Assembly (NCBI RefSeq): GCF_001194135.2
Contig: NC_068995.1
Location: 40,295,915 to 40,359,914, forward strand
DNA from: Octopus bimaculoides
Taxonomy: Eukaryota
Reading direction: 5' to 3'
DNA length: 64,000 bases
The position numbers were made by a program, and so were the translations under genes. Below the pieces are notes generated by a model. It worked only from the letters and a program-made list of their open reading frames with translations. It was not told the origin of the DNA and made no database searches. Each line of letters starts with the position of its first letter. Within the stretch, counting starts at the first letter, position 1. Below are positions 56,161 through 64,000 of this stretch, piece by piece.

Positions 56161-56380
56161 TTTCAGGAGAAGTAATTATATTTAGTTTAGTATTAAAATA
56201 TTACTTTCTAGTCTAGTGTCATTATTTTTTTAAATATACTATTTATATATGTTATTATATTATAATTAGTACTGAACGTATATATATATATATGTCTAGT
56301 TTTTGTTTCGAGATACGCAACTTATGATTTGTTTTATAACTGATTCTAATAACAATGGCGGGCTGCATGACTTAAAAAAG
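56140..56380. promoter_or_regulatory. Putative bidirectional promoter DIS3L/ANAPC11
   Basis: Divergent first exons about 200 bp apart. CCGCCATTTT at 56145-56154 and ACAATGGCGG at 56352-56361 face outwards around an AT-rich spacer. Confidence 0.6.
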
Positions 56381-56399
56381 ATGAAGGTGAAAGTAAAAA
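56381..56399 (+). CDS. ANAPC11: ANAPC11 coding exon 1 (MKVKVK + A)
   Basis: ATGAAGGTGAAAGTAAAAA|gtaagt; consensus donor at 56400, phase 1. Confidence 0.85.
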
Positions 56400-59300
56400 G
56401 TAAGTGTTTTATTTCGTTTTATTTTATTTTATAGAAATAGATGAATATATTTTGTGGGATTTGTATTGAGAAAATGAATTTACATTTAGAAGCCCAAAGC
56501 TGGAAATATTGCGTTATGAAGAATCATAAAGTAAAGAATTAGAATTTTCACTTTTTATTGAATTTTTTTTCTCTCTCTGATCCTAAATTCTGATTTTCGT
56601 TCACATTTATCATGTTTTACAAGGATTAGGGTCTCTTTTGTACATCCACTTGTCTCTACTCAGTTCAAGACACTTTTCTGTTTCCGCTGAAGTGGGACGT
56701 TAAATTAAAGCGATTTGCTGTTAACCGTTCTAACTTTCTTCTGTTGACACTTTTTTGAAGTCTTATATTTTCTGCCAGTTTTATCCACAGCTTCTGATTT
56801 CGTTGCACACTCAGTGACCTTAATTAAATATTATCATTCTTCTAAATACCTCTACCATGGTGCGTTTGTTGAAGGGAATTGTCAATATAAAGTTCCTCAC
56901 CCGTTAACGAAAACAAAAAAAACGCGGTCGATATAAAGATCTTCACCCGGGNNNNNNNNNNNNNNNNNNNNNNNNNNNNNNNNNNNNNNNNNNNNNNNNN
57001 NNNNACGGAATCCCATGTTTTTGGTTATGGAGGATCCGATTCTGAAAAAATTTGCAAAAATCGCATTTCCAAAATTTCAATTTTCCCCACCTTTATTTTT
57101 CACTTTGACCGGAAATGGGGCAAAATTGTGCCAAAACACTGGTGTCTCATGGTGTGCTGATGTCATTCAGAGCAGGCTATGTTGTTAATGCACAAAGTTT
57201 CTAAAGAGGAGTTTCTCTGGGACCAAAATAAAAAAAGACAGTTAATGCCTTTTCATATAAATGGTACATATTGTTATTTTATTCCAATACCACGTCAATG
57301 CATACATTGAAATATTTTCTCTTGGTCATTCAAATGTGCACTTTCTCTCCTTTACCATTCCTGTATCAGTGTATATTAACCTATCCTATCATTCAAACAT
57401 TAAGTCATACTTTCCTTTGATTGTCATCTATGATTATGAAATTTCTTTTCTGTATTACAGGGTGAGTAGCAGTTTGGTAAGAAAAAATGGTTTCCTGATC
57501 ACAAAATGAGTTTTTAATTTCTAAAGTTTCTCTATCCTGTGTGCCAAGAGGTAAGATTCAGGTATACCAAATCTAACTACATAACATTTAAATTCTGGCT
57601 GGAGTTATTTCGCTTTATTAATGAAGATTAGAGATGCTGATCTATAATTGTAGAGGGAACATGTAGAAGGGGTAGACCCAGGAAGACGTGGGACAAAGTG
57701 GTGAGAAAGGATTTACAGACGTTGGAACTCACAGAAGGGATTTCAGGGGACTGAGACTCCTGGCGGTTTGTTGTGCTTGAAAAGACATGCCAAGCTGTAT
57801 TAGTATTCCGATTACTCTGTTAATTGAGATGCTTTTTATTCACTTTGTTTTGAATTCATCATGCATTATGTTGCAGCTTTGTGATTTCGATGATGTGATT
57901 GCTTAGATTTAAAATGACATTGTAAAGAAGTGTGAGAGGCTGGATGCAGCCAGTTTGAATATAAAACAGGTAGAATGTTTTGGCCAGATATGGTCGGTTT
58001 AAATGCTAAAGGGTTTAAAATGTATAAGTTAAACAAGATTGCCAACCCTGTTGAGGAGGGCAGTAACTCCAGATGAACCCAACATGGAACATGCAAACTA
58101 TATCTGATTCCTTTTATACACAACTTTTCTCTTAGGTCACTCCCCACTGCATCATTTGTGCACACTGACATTACACATTCAGCAAAATATGCTTGTCTCA
58201 TTTCTTTGTCACTTTCACAAATCATCTGCATTCAGGGCCTTTGTAGCTTTACACTTCACACACACAAATGTCTTACAAATTGCTCTTCACTATGGGGAAG
58301 AGGCCCTTTCTTGCTAGCATAGGTAGTAGATTACTAGGTGTGACTGTGTGAATTTGAAGTCTGCTTCCCAACCACATGGTTTCAAGTTCAGTCCTACTGA
58401 ACAACACCTTGGGCAAGTGTCTTCCACTATAGTCCCAGACTGACCAAACCTTTGCAAGTAAATTTGGTAGATGGAAATGAAAGAAGCCCATTTTGTGTGG
58501 TTGTTTACATTTGTCCTCCTCGTCTGTCACAACAATTAGCGATGTTATTATCACTTGTCAGTGATTTGTCTATTTACATCATACCTTTGCAGATGTGTGG
58601 GTTAAGAGATCCCTTACTTGAAAAACAGATGAGCAACAGGAAGGGCATCTGGCTAAAAAAAACAGTACCTCAATTATAGATTCAGGTAACCCATGAAAGC
58701 ATGGAAAGATGGACATAATACAAACATTCTTTACCCTAGCTACTATGCTTTCAGAGCACCATCCCTCCCTCACCAATTAGGTCTCCTGGGTTACAAACAC
58801 ATTCTGAGCAAACCTTAATTCTCTTGTACACCTGACATATTTGAAGGCCACCTTTGCTGTTGTCTGTGATTCCACTACACCTTTTGTGTCCATTGTTAAC
58901 ATTAGGTACACTGTATGGAGTTTCTGCATAGTGAGTATGGCCATTTCCCGGACAGTGCCACAATCTTGTCTTCTTTTCTAATTGCCATAACATTTGTCTC
59001 GGCTATCTTCACTTTAACCCTTTAGCATTCAGATTACTCCAACAAATCTAGTAGTTATATATTCACATTGTTTTGAATTAATCATGCATTATACTTGTAG
59101 CTTCAAGGTTTCAATGTTGTGATTGTTTATTTTTGAAATGGTGTTGTAGAGTAGTTGTGAAAAGTTGGGTCTTGCTTGTTTGAACATAAAACAGGTAGAG
59201 TATTTAGGCCAATTATAGCTGGTTTAAATGCAAGGGGGTTAAGGCCCCTCGGCTCCAGGTTTTGCTTCTATATGTGGAACATGCTCATCAGCTCATCAGA

Positions 59301-60822
59301 GTTTAGCCAGTCTTAAATTCCTCTAATTAACTATGATTAATAGGTGAGGACTGAACCCTGAGGGATTCCTACCTGTATGCTAAATTTGTCACAGTGCTCA
59401 TTGTTGACTCTCACCTTGCTGATTGCCCCTTTACTTAGCTTTTACAATTTTCACAAGCCATTTATTAGCTTTTTTGGGGGCCACTATGACAATACTAGGG
59501 CCTCTCTTAAATACTTCTTCCAAGTCTATGAATGCTAGGTATAGAAGCTAACTTCTAGTTAAGTATTTTTCTTGCAGTTCTCCCACTAGGAAAAGGGTGT
59601 CAGTAGTATTTCTTGCTGGTATAAAGCCAAACTACATCTCATCCAGACTAGCCTTGTTCTGAATTAAATTTGCAATAATTCTTTCTGTAACTATCATATC
59701 CTGGTCAGCAATTAAATACCTTTATAATTTAATCTTTTTTGTACATCTCCTTTGTTCTTATAACAGTTTTTACAATAATACTGCTAAGCCAATCACCCAT
59801 TTATACTACCCGATTGATTATTCAAATTACTAAACCATATGCTACTCTGCCAGATATCTTGAACATTTCAGCAACTGTTTCTAACAGACGACCCATTCTC
59901 CACAACAGAAGTGTTAGGGCCACTCCTCCTGGTTAAGAAGATTGGCCTGCAGGAGTCCTGTGTTGGTGCTATGTTAAAAGCACCCAGCATATACTACAAA
60001 GTGGTTGGCATTGGGAAGGGAATCCAGCCGTAGAAACTAATCTAAATCAAGACTGGAACCTGGTACAGCTCTTCTGCTTATCAGCTTTGGTCAAACTGTC
60101 CAACCCATGCCAGCAGAGAAAACGGACGTTAGAGGAGGATGAAGAAGAAGAACCGGCTTTCTCTGCTTTCATATCCTTAATCGTCTTATCAAACCCTACT
60201 TTTGTCAACTTGAATGGCCGATCTCTTTGTTGAGCCAACTTTCTCGCTCCCTTGCTTTCTCCCCATTCACTGACCAGACACTAATATTTCCATTCCCCTA
60301 TTCAGAGTCAGTAAGACCAAGATTAGTATTACTCCCCTGTGTACACATCTCCCCAGTGACATTTTGATTCTTTCTTTCCCTCTTTGCCAAATATAACTGA
60401 TGCCTTCTTCCTTTCTCTTATAGCTATCTTTCGTCTTTTACTTCTGTCAGTCATTAGACTGTGGGCAAACTGGGGTACCATCTTGAAGAATCTTAGTTGA
60501 TCAAATTGACCCTGGTACTCTCTCTTTTTAAAACTGGTACTTATTCTATTAATTTCTTTTGCTGGACTGCTAAGTTGCAGAGACATAAACATCCCAACAC
60601 AGGTTGTCAAAGAGTGATGGGGGACAAATATAGAGAGAAAGACACACTCTACTGATTTATGTAAATAGTATTGACATATTTCTGATCTTTCTCATTGTTT
60701 CAGCTGGACGGCTGTAGCCACATGGCGATGGATTGCCAATGATGATAATTGTGGAATTTGTCGTATGGCATTTGATGGTTGCTGTCCTGATTGCAAACTT
60801 CCTGGCGATGACTGTCCCCTTG
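56381..60822 (+). CDS. ANAPC11: Anaphase-promoting complex subunit 11 (RING-H2), 5' part; exons 56381-56399, 57461 (1 nt) and 60704-60822; the rest lies beyond the window or in the gap
   Basis: Spliced product [46 protein letters not shown](V) closely matches APC11 (human [47 protein letters not shown]). Confidence 0.93.
57461..57461 (+). CDS. ANAPC11: ANAPC11 single-nucleotide exon (G; middle base of Ser7, AGC)
   Basis: atttcttttctgtattacAG|G|GTgagt: a polypyrimidine tract, YAG, one base and a consensus donor. It is needed to bridge phase 1 to phase 2. Confidence 0.8.
58030..60420 (-). mobile_element. Fragmented old RTE LINE with nested SINE/MITE insertions
   Basis: RT fragment at 59340-59760 ([45 protein letters not shown]); other RTE-like pieces at 58030-58240, 58750-59010 and 60300-60420. 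Confidence 0.6.
59018..59238. mobile_element. piggyBac-type MITE (TTAA|CCCTTTAGCATT...AATGCAAGGGGG|TTAA)
   Basis: TTAA flanks at 59014-17 and 59239-42. Family copies at 63239-63458 and 57820-58016, fragments near 9045-9090 and 47520-47590. Confidence 0.7.
60704..60822 (+). CDS. ANAPC11: ANAPC11 coding exon 3 (C + WTAVATW...GDDCPL + G)
   Basis: ctttctcattgtttcag acceptor, phase 2 start, G|gtgggt donor, 119 nt. Confidence 0.93.
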
Positions 60823-61865: not shown

Positions 61866-64000
61866 ATATATATGTATATATCAGATGGATGTGTTATAAT
61901 ACTGTTCTACACATACAATAACAGCCATACCAACAATCCAACATACATGTATGGATATATATATAAACTGTGTACGTGTGTCTTTTTGTCCACCACCACT
62001 GCTTGGTAACTGGAGTTGGAGTGTTTACATTTCTATAACCTAACAGTTCAGCAAAAGAGACTGATGGAATAAGTACTGAAGTTGATTCGTTTGACTAAAA
62101 GATTCTTCAAGGTGGTGCCCCAGCATGGCCACAGTCTAATTAACTGAAACAAGTAAAAGAAGTTATATATGGCGCAGGAGTGGCTGTGTGGTAAGTAGCT
62201 TGCTTACCAACCACATGGTTCCGGGTTCAGTCCCACTGCGTGGCACCTTGGGCAAGTGTCTTCTACTATAGCCTCGGGCTGACCAAAGCCTTGTGAGTGG
62301 ATTTGGTAGACGGAAACTGAAAGAAGCCTGTCGTATATATATATATATATATATGTTTGTGTGTCTGTGTTTGTCCCCCCACCATCGCTTGACAACTGAT
62401 GCTGGTGTGTTTACGTCCCCATAACTTAGCGGTTCGGCAAAAAGAGACCAATAGAATAAGTACTAGGCTTACAAAGAATAAGTCCTGGGGTCGATTTGCT
62501 TCGACTAAAGGCGGTGCTCCAGCATGTCCGCAGTCAAATGACTTAAACAAGTAAAAGAGTATGTGTGTGTGTTAACTCCAATATATGTTAATTTATGTGA
62601 GAATAAACATGTCTTGCTTTCCAATATAGTTTTGTTCCTTTGATCAACAGTACACGTCACCAGATTTGGAAAGTAATAAAATTAATCCTAAATTTATCTT
62701 ATTGCATTTAAGCCTGCTAAGTGTACAATGAACTGACCAAATAAAACCACAGTCTGGGAATATTTTCAGATGCTTTCCCTCCAATGTTTTTAACTTTTTC
62801 ACAAAGACAGGACTACATTAAGACTGTTGTGTACTGAGTGAGCAAGACAATGTTTTTGTCGTCTAGGATACCAGCCTATTGTTGGTTGACCTCTCTCTCA
62901 CAGGTCCTTGTAGTTATTCTATTCTCTACAATTATATATAGACCAATAAACCAAGCCACATATTAATATGGCTTTTTGTTGATATGAAAACATGTTTGAA
63001 CTGGATTTTATCACAATGCCAATGAACTGCTAGTCCAGTAGTTGATCTGTTCAGTTGCTTCATATCAACCATAGTTCATGCTTTGAAGAACCATTTTAAA
63101 AATTCTGCCATGTCTTTCATTAAATATTGAAAATAACAAAACGTCTGGAAATATTTTGTTAAGTGTCAAGCTTTGTCACGGATGAATTGATGTTTGGAAC
63201 ATGACTTAACAAAAAGTTCTTACACAGAATTATTTTAACCCTTTAGCATTTAGATTACTCTTTGATATATGATGCTTATTTATTCACATTGTTTTGAATT
63301 TATTTTGCATTATATCACAGCTTCTAGACTTCGAAGATGTGACTGTTTATTTTTAGAATGACATTGTAAGGTAGGTGTGAAAGGCCAGATCTGTCCAGTT
63401 TGAACATAGAACAGTTAGAATATTTGGGCCTGATATCGCTAGTTTAAATGATAGAGGGCTAAGGGCTTATGATTTAAGAGCATTTGGAAACACATCGATG
63501 GAACCAAGATGGTATTATGTTGGTTTAGATTAAAAGGAGTTAAATACTTCTTTCTGGATCACAGATGAGGGAACATTTCATTAATCATTAAGTGCATGTT
63601 GTTGGTAACCATTATAGTGTGTCAATTGAGACAGAAAAATGATAGAAGTCCACTTACAGGGTCTGAGCCATATATCTCTTACTTACTTCCATATGGTATT
63701 CATCTAACACCTTTTTGAGCGTGGCTGTTGCCAGTACCGTGTGACTGGCCCTCGTGCCAGTGGCACGTAAAAGCACCCATTACACTCTCGGAGTGGTTGG
63801 CGTTAGGAAGGGCATCCAGCTGTAGAAACTCTGCCAAATCAGATTGGAGCCTGGCGTAGCCTCTTCTGGCTTGCCAGTCCTCAGTCAAATCGTCCAACCC
63901 ATGCTAGCATGGAAAGCGGACGTTAAACGACGACGATGATGATGATGATTTCCATATGGTATTCATCTATCAATTCCACTTAACTACAAAGTAATACTTG

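What the first reader, a model, noticed from the sequence alone, without database searches (positions are those of the whole stretch)
56381..60822. Obligatory single-nucleotide exon in ANAPC11 (G at 57461)
Seen in sequence: exon 1 ends ATG AAG GTG AAA GTA AAA A|gtaagt (phase 1), and the conserved exon starts tttcag|C TGG ACG GCT (phase 2). Direct joining gives MKVKVKTGRL* (frameshift, then stop). About 1 kb into the intron is atttcttttctgtattacAG-G-GTgagt, a polypyrimidine tract with a YAG acceptor and a consensus donor separated by exactly one base. Including it restores A|G|C = Ser7 and the canonical APC11 N-terminus [16 protein letters not shown]. Established knowledge: APC11 is the essential RING-H2 subunit of APC/C, and a constitutive 1-nt exon was reported in Arabidopsis APC11 (Guo and Liu 2015, recalled from literature). 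Inference: this is an animal 1-nt exon in the same gene. If the plant exon is also the middle base of codon 7, the arrangement could be ancient rather than convergent; I cannot confirm the plant position from here. Standard gene predictors and spliced aligners would miss or mis-model this exon.
Basis: partly seen in the sequence, partly recalled or inferred. Interest (0 to 1): 0.95.

Follow-up and report, generated by a model that had tools for sequence, protein, structure and literature searches.

The report
One-base exon in octopus APC11
The octopus gene for the essential cell-cycle protein APC11 can only be read in frame if a single G, sitting alone about 1 kb inside an intron, is spliced in as an exon of one base; the same arrangement recurs at the same codon in molluscs, sea urchins, corals and plants, so it is probably very old and is routinely mis-annotated.

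Summary
Exon 1 (56381-56399) ends in phase 1 and exon 2 (60704-60822) starts in phase 2. Joining them directly gives MKVKVKTGRL*. The intron holds one strong site, attacAG-G-GTGAGTa, with the G at 57461.

It is not an assembly error. Octopus sinensis, an independent gap-free assembly, has the same 5-A run and the same site. The window's gap matches 178 collinear intronic bases there.

The same 19-nt exon 1 and phase-1/phase-2 mismatch occurs in Haliotis, a second mollusc-like contig, Strongylocentrotus, an ambulacrarian contig, Porites, another invertebrate contig and the plant Nymphaea. RefSeq proteins of O. sinensis, Haliotis and S. purpuratus read K-S-W, which needs exactly one extra G.

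AGGGTRAGT occurs once in this intron in five lineages (joint chance about 2e-8). It does not occur in the other 112 kb of the window.

Published Arabidopsis primers plus Nymphaea place the plant 1-nt exon at the middle base of codon 7, as here.

The UniProt O. bimaculoides model (KSNW, weak donor at 56404) is probably wrong.

No RNA reads could be examined. Because the base is G, a shifted splice site is not formally excluded.

I found no report of an animal case. Verdict: supported, a new member of a known kind, of high interest.

The parts
56381..56399 (+). APC11 coding exon 1: ATG + 5 codons (MKVKVK) + A, the first base of codon 7. 19 nt, ends in phase 1.
   Evidence: The same 19-nt exon 1 occurs in O. 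sinensis, L001, L002, Porites, L013, S. purpuratus, Haliotis and Nymphaea.
56400..57460 (+). Upstream sub-intron. Donor GTAAGT, acceptor ttacAG. It contains the assembly gap 56952-57004.
   Evidence: Collinear with O. sinensis across the gap.
56404..56409 (+). Weak alternative donor taa|GTGTTT, used by the published O. bimaculoides model (gives KSNW, 85 aa). It is the GT at +5/+6 of the real donor.
   Evidence: Not conserved: it reads GG in O. sinensis.
56952..57004 (.). Assembly gap (53 N). It corresponds to 178 intronic bases in O. sinensis.
57414..57484 (+). 71-nt block identical between the two Octopus species. It is the longest such block in the alignable intron. It covers the presumed branch-point region, the pyrimidine tract, AG, the single G and the donor.
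   Evidence: next longest block 43 nt; overall identity 0.872.
57441..57460 (+). 3' splice-site signals of the 1-nt exon: pyrimidine-rich tract tttcttttctgtatt followed by acAG.
   Evidence: ATTACAG is shared with L002.
57461..57461 (+). The single-nucleotide exon: G, the middle base of codon 7 (A-G-C = Ser7).
   Evidence: Ser7 is in the O. sinensis RefSeq protein.
57462..57467 (+). 5' splice site GTGAGT of the downstream sub-intron. After exon 1 is joined to the G, the junction reads AAG|GTGAGT, a consensus donor.
   Evidence: The regenerated-donor reading is inference.
57462..60703 (+). Downstream sub-intron (3242 nt). It carries repeat insertions that are absent from O. sinensis.
60704..60822 (+). 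APC11 coding exon 2. It starts with C, the third base of codon 7, then [39 protein letters not shown], and ends in phase 1.

Best explanation
The window carries the first two coding exons of the APC11 (ANAPC11) gene, almost certainly of Octopus bimaculoides. Codon 7 (AGC, Ser) is split over three exons: A ends exon 1 (56399), G at 57461 is an exon of one nucleotide, and C starts exon 2 (60704).

The G lies between a normal U2-type acceptor (pyrimidine tract + ACAG) and a consensus donor (GTGAGT). U1 snRNP pairs with positions -3 to +6 of a donor, so here it would cover the acceptor AG itself. The two sites therefore cannot be recognised at the same time by exon definition. The two sub-introns (about 1.06-1.2 kb and 3.2 kb) must be removed one after the other, as in recursive splicing.

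There are two possible orders. Either exon 1 is first joined to the G, which regenerates the consensus donor AAG|GTGAGT for the second step. Or the downstream intron goes first, leaving ...ttacAG|GCTGG as the acceptor for exon 1.

Shown here: the phase mismatch, the site, its conservation and enrichment, and Ser7 in related RefSeq proteins. Inferred: that the mRNA G comes from 57461, and that the splicing is sequential. The order of the steps is unknown.

The arrangement sits at the same base of the same codon as the experimentally proven 1-nt exon of plant APC11. It is present in several animal phyla, so it is most simply read as inherited from a common ancestor.
For: 1. The phase-1/phase-2 mismatch with a 19-nt exon 1 is present in the window, O. 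sinensis, the mollusc-like L002 and the ambulacrarian-like L001, Porites evermanni and L013, S. purpuratus, Haliotis and the plant Nymphaea.

2. Exactly one extra base, and it is G. RefSeq proteins read KSW (AGC/AGT) in O. sinensis XP_029646490.2, Haliotis XP_046584164.1 and S. purpuratus XP_011675576.1. O. sinensis has no canonical in-frame alternative. Haliotis and the urchin do have a canonical +4 donor that the models did not use. The transcriptome-derived Arion protein has a single residue between K6 and W8.

3. AGGGTRAGT occurs once in the sense strand of this intron in octopus, L002, Haliotis, L001 and S. purpuratus. Shuffle P(>=1) is 0.019, 0.013, 0.073, 0.05 and 0.022. For the four lineages tested after the motif was defined on the window, the joint value is about 1e-6. 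The motif occurs 0 times in the remaining 112 kb of the window.

4. The site is an island of conservation. ATTACAGGGTGAGTA is the top blastn hit between the octopus and L002 introns. ATTGAA(T/A)AAAGGGTAAGT is shared by L001 and S. purpuratus. The site lies in the longest exact block (71 nt) between the two Octopus introns.

5. Plant precedent at the same base. The Arabidopsis primer ATGAAAGTCAAGATCTTGC was used on both gDNA and cDNA. The site is CAG-A-GTAGGT, and mutating the A changes the cDNA. Nymphaea has CTC C|GT...ag|G TGG with AG-A-GT sites. Plant read-through models break just before W8.

6. A protist or alga contig (L060) has 37 nt + G + 35 nt between the same two exons, while the gene's other intron is 42 nt.
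Against: No cDNA, RNA-seq read, lariat or splicing intermediate from any octopus could be examined.

The RefSeq proteins are models whose supporting evidence I could not see.

The inserted base is G in every animal case, and the first and last bases of the whole intron are also G. The mature mRNA sequence therefore cannot distinguish a 1-nt exon from a splice site shifted by one base.

The only deposited O. bimaculoides protein uses the 56404 donor (KSNW).

Porites and L013 lack the strict motif. They have only weaker candidates such as CAG-G-GTAGGG and CAG-G-GTGAGG.

The one non-G candidate outside plants (L084, AG-A-GTAAGG) sits in a gene copy with an internal frame change, and no transcript relative was found.
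Confidence: 0.85

Rival explanations
1. The weak donor at 56404 (taa|GTGTTT) is the real splice site in O. bimaculoides. A single canonical intron 56404-60703 then gives an 85-aa protein, MKVKVKSNW..., as in UniProt A0A0L8HBE0. The AG-G-GT site is irrelevant.
For: It is the only short canonical single-intron in-frame solution in the window, and it is the deposited model. Comparable +1-residue models exist for Acropora (KREW) and Glandiceps (KSSW).
Against: The donor is very poor: no A at +4 and no G at +5. It is simply the GT at +5/+6 of the strong donor GTAAGT, so any GTRAGT donor offers it to a gene predictor.

It reads GG in O. sinensis, which has no canonical solution at all yet is modelled as KSW. 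Haliotis and S. purpuratus have the +4 donor but RefSeq gives KSW.

Among the full-length and intron-free sequences inspected here, the spacing K6-x-W8 holds apart from the suspect +1-residue models listed in this report (Acropora, Glandiceps, Salpingoeca).

It does not explain the conserved deep-intron motif.
Confidence: 0.07
2. There is a single intron with a splice site shifted by one base. Either cleavage falls after the G of the donor (AAAAAG|taagt, a TA-AG intron) or before the G of the acceptor (ttca|GCTGG, a GT-CA intron). The mRNA would have the same sequence, AAAAAGCTGG.
For: The extra base is G in all animal cases, as this model requires. Spliced aligners would represent the transcript this way.
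Against: TA-AG or GT-CA introns used constitutively in an essential gene across phyla have no known mechanism (established knowledge of U2-type splicing).

The model does not explain the enrichment and conservation of AGGGTRAGT inside the intron.

In plants the inserted base is A, and it follows the mutated intronic base.

L060 has two normal-sized mini-introns around the G.
Confidence: 0.04
3. It is an artefact or a non-splicing rescue. Possibilities are a one-base assembly deletion in the A run, a pseudogene, transcriptional slippage on the A run, or -1 ribosomal frameshifting on the directly joined mRNA.
For: Exon 1 ends in a 5-A homopolymer, and the assembly is gap-rich.
Against: The same run is present in the independent O. 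sinensis assembly. The same mismatch occurs in species without an A run at the junction (Porites AAA C, Nymphaea CTC C).

Exon 2 is intact and the gene is collinear with the O. sinensis gene up to the window end.

Slippage or frameshifting would give Asn, not the Ser seen in the RefSeq models.
Confidence: 0.02

Closest known systems
Constitutive single-nucleotide exon of plant APC11 (Arabidopsis A333, Guo and Liu 2015, PMC4674806; conserved in land plants, Yu et al. 2022, PMC8831610)
   Same: The gene is the same. Exon 1 is 19 nt (ATG + 5 codons + 1 base), the single base is the middle base of codon 7, and exon 2 starts one base before the Trp8 codon. The architecture is AG-N-GT deep in the intron. 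Annotations are systematically wrong at the N-terminus.
   Different: The base is G (Ser or Arg) in animals and A (Gln or Lys) in plants. Animal sub-introns are kilobases long rather than tens to hundreds of bases. The octopus acceptor has an ordinary pyrimidine tract, whereas Arabidopsis has an A10 run. The plant case is proven by mutagenesis; the animal case rests on comparative evidence only.
One-nucleotide exon of Fusarium CYP621A P450 genes (Nelson and Syed 2026, PMC12940212)
   Same: A phase-1 exon must be joined to a phase-2 exon. The core AG-G-GT is identical, and the base is the middle base of a codon in a conserved motif. It was also found by comparative annotation.
   Different: It is an unrelated gene in fungi, with very short introns and SRA read support. 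That paper calls itself the second example and mentions no animal case.
Recursive splice sites (ratchet points) of Drosophila long introns and vertebrate RS-exons (cited in PMC4674806 as Burnette 2005, Duff 2015, Sibley 2015)
   Same: An acceptor and a donor are juxtaposed deep in a long intron. A consensus donor is regenerated after the first ligation, and the intron is removed stepwise (inference for this locus).
   Different: Ratchet points leave zero nucleotides in the mRNA and are not needed for the reading frame. Here the donor is offset by one base, so one nucleotide is retained and is obligatory.
1-nt microexon of plant VPS55 (Yu et al. 2022)
   Same: It is a 1-nt exon with a conserved GTRAGT donor, and it is missing from annotations.
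   Different: It is a different gene, and in several lineages it is alternatively rather than constitutively included.
Placozoan mitochondrial cox1 single-base-pair exon (PMC5436844)
   Same: It is a one-base exon in an animal.
   Different: It lies in the mitochondrial genome with organellar, partly trans-spliced introns, not spliceosomal nuclear introns (title and abstract only; the paper itself was not read).

Membership tests
APC11 single-nucleotide exon (plant type, Guo and Liu 2015) | The gene is APC11, the RING-H2 subunit of the APC/C. | tested here: met
   tblastn with human APC11 gives 82% identity over residues 8-46. Hits carry PF12861 zf-ANAPC11. There is an exact match to the O. 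bimaculoides APC11 UniRef entry apart from the junction.
APC11 single-nucleotide exon (plant type, Guo and Liu 2015) | The flanking coding exons are in incompatible phases (1 then 2), so exactly one nucleotide is missing. | tested here: met
   The spacing K6-x-W8 holds in the intron-free and transcript-derived homologues inspected, apart from suspect +1-residue models.
APC11 single-nucleotide exon (plant type, Guo and Liu 2015) | There is an intronic AG-N-GT with usable acceptor and donor signals. | tested here: met
   attacAG-G-GTGAGT at 57459-57467 is the only one of 14 AG-N-GT sites with YAG, a pyrimidine tract and a consensus donor.
APC11 single-nucleotide exon (plant type, Guo and Liu 2015) | The single base is the middle base of codon 7 (19-nt exon 1). 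| tested here: met
   Window: A|G|C. Arabidopsis: primer ATGAAAGTCAAGATCTTGC + A + G TGG. Nymphaea: CTC C|...|G TGG.
APC11 single-nucleotide exon (plant type, Guo and Liu 2015) | The mature mRNA contains the extra nucleotide. | tested here: inconclusive
   The O. sinensis, Haliotis and S. purpuratus RefSeq proteins have Ser7, which needs an extra G. No reads or cDNA could be inspected. The 84-aa Ser7 O. bimaculoides protein is not in the collection.
APC11 single-nucleotide exon (plant type, Guo and Liu 2015) | Changing or deleting the intronic base changes or frameshifts the mRNA. | not testable with these tools
   This needs a minigene or genome editing.
Recursive splice site (zero-nucleotide ratchet point) | Acceptor AG directly abuts donor GT, and no nucleotide is retained. 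| tested here: not met
   AG and GT are separated by one base, and that base is required for the reading frame.
Recursive splice site (zero-nucleotide ratchet point) | A consensus 5' splice site is regenerated after the first ligation. | tested here: met
   Exon 1 ...AAAAA + G gives AAG|GTGAGT (sequence). Its actual use is not shown.
U12-type (minor spliceosome) intron | The 5' splice site is RTATCCTT. | tested here: not met
   Window donors are GTAAGT and GTGAGT. The motif is seen only in Nymphaea and L060.
Ordinary single intron with alternative donor (current O. bimaculoides model) | A canonical donor that is conserved in the sister species and preserves protein length. | tested here: not met
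   GT at 56404 reads GG in O. sinensis, and using it adds one residue.

The most novel reading that the evidence does not exclude
The one-nucleotide exon at the middle base of APC11 codon 7 is a single ancient feature, inherited from the common ancestor of plants and animals. That would make it both the smallest possible exon and one of the oldest.

The other states seen today would then be products of differential loss of one or both flanking introns. These states are: no intron; only the phase-1 intron with the G fused to exon 2; and only the phase-2 intron with the base fused to exon 1.

A further, weaker possibility concerns the upstream intron in the plant lineage. It may be or have been U12-type, because GTATCCTTGT is present at or next to the exon-1 donor in Nymphaea and L060.
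Probability: 0.6. Interest if true: 0.9.

Novelty: new member of a known kind. Interest (0 to 1): 0.82.

Why it matters
1. It would be the first spliceosomal single-nucleotide exon described in an animal. The searchable literature knows only plant APC11 and VPS55 and Fusarium CYP621A.

2. The identical position in plants, cnidarians, molluscs and ambulacrarians makes a 1-nt exon a candidate for conservation over more than a billion years. That bears directly on how introns are gained, lost and kept.

3. It offers a natural animal substrate for studying how the spliceosome handles an exon too small for exon definition. It also links constitutive splicing with recursive splicing.

4. It explains a practical problem. 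APC11 is mis-modelled in many animal genome annotations, including the UniProt entry for this octopus. The errors are an extra residue, junk bridging sequence, or a missing N-terminus. The locus is therefore a sharp benchmark for gene predictors and spliced aligners.

Tried and rejected
**Exact look-ups.** The 84-aa octopus protein with Ser7, Asn7, Thr7 or Ile7 is not in the collection. Only the 85-aa Ser-Asn model is, and it is a prediction.

**Transcript-derived cephalopod proteins.** None were found in two homology searches.

**Failed contig look-ups.** Beta vulgaris isoform X2 and Exaiptasia isoform X2 were not on record.

**Porites and L013.** They show the phase mismatch but no strict AGGGTRAGT. 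Their single base could not be placed, and cross-species blastn gave nothing at the candidates.

**L011.** Its exon 3 has a stop codon and no exon 1 lies within 10 kb. It is probably a pseudogene copy and was not used.

**L084-88.** This is an attractive non-G case (AG-A-GTAAGG, sub-introns of 55 and 52 nt). But exon 2 changes frame between CPDC and GCPL, and the last homology search found no relative above 68% identity. Residue 7 could not be checked.

**Brassicaceae, Selaginella and Closterium models.** All are wrong at the N-terminus, so they do not show residue 7.

**Rejected explanations.**
- Assembly deletion: the A run is the same in O. sinensis.
- Transcriptional slippage or -1 frameshifting: other species have no A run, and these would give Asn, not Ser.
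- RNA editing: it cannot insert a base.
- A longer microexon of 4 or 7 nt: the spacing K6-x-W8 is fixed.
- U12 introns in the window: the donors are U2-type.

**Literature.** Four searches with about 14 spellings of "one-nucleotide exon", plus ANAPC11 + microexon, found no animal nuclear case.


Full report
**1. The observation**

The letters are as described.
- Exon 1 is ATG AAG GTG AAA GTA AAA A|gtaagt (56381-56399) and ends in phase 1.
- Exon 2 is tttcag|C TGG ACG GCT ... CCC CTT G|gtgggt (60704-60822). It starts in phase 2 and encodes residues 8-46 of APC11, at 82% identity to human.
- Joining the two directly gives MKVKVKTGRL*.
- At 57459-57467 the intron reads ...tttcttttctgtattacAG-G-GTGAGT.

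The 4304-nt intron holds 14 AG-N-GT sites. Only this one combines a YAG acceptor, a pyrimidine tract and a consensus donor.

The only canonical single-intron in-frame solutions in the window use very poor donors: taa|GTGTTT at 56404 (gives KSNW) and ttc|GTTTTA at 56416.

**2. The gap and the assembly**

The 53-N gap at 56952-57004 lies inside the upstream sub-intron. Its flanks are collinear with a gap-free Octopus sinensis chromosome (L014). There the missing piece is 178 nt and holds no AG-N-GT.

O. sinensis has the same five A's at the end of exon 1 and the same ATTACAGGGTGAGTAGCAG. That rules out a homopolymer deletion in the assembly.

Intron 2 contains the 892-N gap. Exon 3 lies about 190 nt beyond the end of the window, and the gene is collinear with O. 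sinensis up to position 64000.

**3. Which organism, and what the databases say**

The 85-aa protein MKVKVKSNW... exactly matches UniRef100_A0A0L8HBE0, APC11 of Octopus bimaculoides. So the window is very probably that species, and its published model closes the frame with the weak donor at 56404.

In O. sinensis that GT is GG, and no canonical in-frame single-intron solution exists within 120 nt. RefSeq XP_029646490.2 nevertheless reads ...[13 protein letters not shown].... Ser7 is exactly A+G+C.

**4. The same puzzle in other species**

A 19-nt exon 1 ending in phase 1, and an exon 2 starting one base before the Trp8 codon, are found in:

| Locus | Organism | Exon 1 end / exon 2 start |
|---|---|---|
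| L002 | mollusc-like, 95-96% to Octopus and Haliotis | AAA A\|GTGAGT ... ag\|C TGG |
| L016 | Haliotis | AAA A\|GTAGGT ... ag\|C TGG |
| L001 | ambulacrarian-like, 98.7% to Glandiceps | A ... T |
| L015 | Strongylocentrotus purpuratus | A ... T |
| L012 | Porites evermanni | AAA C\|GTGAGT ... ag\|G TGG |
| L013 | unidentified invertebrate | A ... G |
| L017 | Nymphaea colorata (plant) | CTC C\|GTATCC ... ag\|G TGG |

RefSeq proteins of Haliotis and S. purpuratus read KSW (84 aa), although both genomes offer a canonical donor 4 nt downstream that would give KSSW or KSNW. This implies transcript support for exactly one extra G. I could not see that evidence myself.

Elsewhere the junction is mis-modelled in every conceivable way:
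- One extra residue: O. bimaculoides, Acropora KREW, Glandiceps KSSW.
- Junk bridging sequence: Lytechinus, Dreissena isoform X2.
- N-terminus lost: Porites, Pocillopora, Stylophora, Orbicella, Mytilus, Patella, Mactra, Batillaria, Elysia, Bulinus, Rhipicephalus, Blattella, Cryptotermes, Branchiostoma.

The +4 "solution" is a by-product of the donor consensus GTRAGT, whose positions +5/+6 are themselves GT.

**5. Where the base comes from**

The motif AGGGTRAGT was defined on the window. It occurs exactly once in the sense strand of the homologous intron in L002, Haliotis, L001 and S. purpuratus, as well as in both octopuses.
- The probability of at least one occurrence in dinucleotide shuffles is 0.013-0.073 per intron. 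The joint value is about 1e-6 for the four test lineages and about 2e-8 with octopus included.
- The rest of the window (112 kb, both strands) has none.

The site is also an island of similarity in introns that otherwise do not align.
- ATTACAGGGTGAGTA is the top blastn hit between the octopus and L002 introns.
- ATTGAA(T/A)AAAGGGTAAGT is shared by L001 and the sea urchin.
- Within Octopus, the site sits in the longest exact block of the alignable intron: 71 nt against 43 for the runner-up, at 87% overall identity.

A shifted non-canonical splice site would give the same mRNA, because the first and last intron bases are G. But it predicts none of these three observations.

**6. The plant comparison**

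Guo and Liu (PMC4674806) showed by mutagenesis that a single A, 333 nt into the first intron of Arabidopsis APC11, is an exon. Yu et al. (PMC8831610) showed it is conserved across land plants. Neither text gives the codon position, so I derived it from four observations.
- The forward primer ATGAAAGTCAAGATCTTGC was used on both genomic DNA and cDNA, so exon 1 has at least 19 nt and ends in C.
- The mutagenesis primers give the site as CCCAAAAAAAAAACAG-A-GTAGGT.
- Plant read-through ORFs mostly show R-W (ag + G TGG). Every junk residue before W8 has a codon ending in G.
- Nymphaea shows CTC C|GT ... ag|G TGG directly, with two AG-A-GT sites in a 499-nt intron.

So the plant exon is the middle base of codon 7 (C-A-G, Gln). 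That is the same base position as in the animals.

**7. Wider distribution**

A scan of metagenome contigs shows all four possible states at codon 7:
- No intron.
- Only the phase-1 intron, with the G fused to exon 2 (A|GT...cag|GC TGG). Examples are the mite-like L041, and L028, L047, L032, L051 and L074.
- Only the phase-2 intron, with a 20-nt exon 1 (L056, L070).
- Both introns.

L060 is a compact example of the last state: A|GTATGT...(37 nt)...TTGTAG|G|GTACTT...(35 nt)...GTTAG|C TGG, in a gene whose other intron is 42 nt. One caveat applies. A U12-like GTATCCTT lies 4 nt downstream of that donor and could give a single 69-nt intron with one extra residue.

The coexistence of phase-1-only and phase-2-only lineages is most simply explained by loss from a two-intron ancestor. 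This is inference, and the taxa are mostly unidentified.

**8. Mechanism**

A donor's U1 binding site spans positions -3 to +6. For a 1-nt exon it therefore overlaps the acceptor AG. Simultaneous exon definition is not possible, so the two sub-introns must go sequentially. This follows from established knowledge, and Guo and Liu argue the same.

If the upstream intron goes first, exon 1 (...AAAAA) plus G regenerates AAG|GTGAGT, a consensus donor, as at a recursive splice site. The difference is that the donor is offset by one base, so one nucleotide stays in the mRNA. The order of the steps cannot be determined from sequence.

**9. Novelty**

Four full-text searches found no nuclear single-nucleotide exon in an animal. 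A 2026 paper on Fusarium CYP621A calls itself the second example after Arabidopsis.

The kind is known and the gene is the same. This is therefore a new member of a known kind. What it adds is an animal case and evidence that the plant and animal exons occupy the same position.

**10. Limits**

- No RNA reads were available.
- The RefSeq proteins are models.
- The inserted base is G in all animal cases.
- The coral site is unresolved.
- The one non-G protist candidate is in a possibly decayed copy and could not be checked.

I put 0.85 on the 1-nt exon at 57461, 0.07 on the 56404 donor, 0.04 on a shifted site and 0.02 on an artefact. The remaining 0.02 is unassigned.

Noticed in passing
L017 5565-5574 (Nymphaea) and L060 1334-1343: The exon-1 donor in Nymphaea reads GTATCCTTGT, a perfect U12-type 5' splice-site consensus. 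The same 10-mer lies 4 nt downstream of the exon-1 donor in the alga/plant-like contig L060. The upstream intron may be, or have been, a minor-spliceosome intron in the plant lineage. All animal donors examined are U2-type.
   Followed up: partly
window 56292-56380; L014 3001-3087: The O. sinensis RefSeq protein carries a 29-residue N-terminal extension (MSSFVSRY...). In the window its ATG (56292-56294) is out of frame because of a 1-nt difference in a T run, and an in-frame TAG lies at 56297-56299. An in-frame ATG at 56324 could add 19 residues, but the conserved start is 56381.
   Followed up: partly
L011 10066-10818: A mollusc-like contig has APC11 exons 2 and 3 with an in-frame stop in exon 3 (CIV*WL). 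No exon 1 lies within 10 kb upstream, and reverse-transcriptase ORFs surround it. It is probably a decayed gene copy.
   Followed up: partly
L012 4594-7040 and L013 17176-17427: A frataxin (PF01491) gene lies next to APC11 both in Porites evermanni and in the unidentified contig L013. This could be conserved microsynteny, or a hint that L013 is a cnidarian.
   Followed up: no
window about 63709-63948; also 57831-58015 and 59055-59244: A roughly 240-nt insertion flanked by a duplicated ttccatatggtattcatcta is absent from O. sinensis and looks SINE-like. Two copies of another repeat lie in the downstream sub-intron and match O. sinensis intron 2. Many further copies of a repeat from O. sinensis intron 2 are scattered through the window.
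   Followed up: no
L015 5166-5196, L001 8445-8470, L016 4467-4483; Arabidopsis site from PMC4674806 Table S1: In sea urchin, L001, Haliotis and Arabidopsis the acceptor of the 1-nt exon is preceded by an A-rich stretch (attgaaaaaAG, attgaataaAG, ctaaacAG, A10-CAG) rather than a pyrimidine tract. A branch-point-like CTGAT/TGATC lies only about 10 nt upstream. Octopus and L002 have an ordinary pyrimidine tract.
   Followed up: no
L084 1699-1815 (same in L085-L088): In a protist gene with a candidate AG-A-GTAAGG 1-nt exon, exon 2 changes reading frame between CPDC and GCPL: 8 nt separate two Cys codons where 18 are expected. This is identical in five contigs from different samples. It could be a decayed copy, or another very small unrecognised feature.
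   Followed up: partly
proteins P0221 (Salpingoeca rosetta) and P0226 (Selaginella): The annotated proteins read MKVKVKRKW and MKVKTRFCRW, which is one and two residues too many before Trp8. This suggests the same junction problem in a choanoflagellate and a lycophyte annotation.
   Followed up: no
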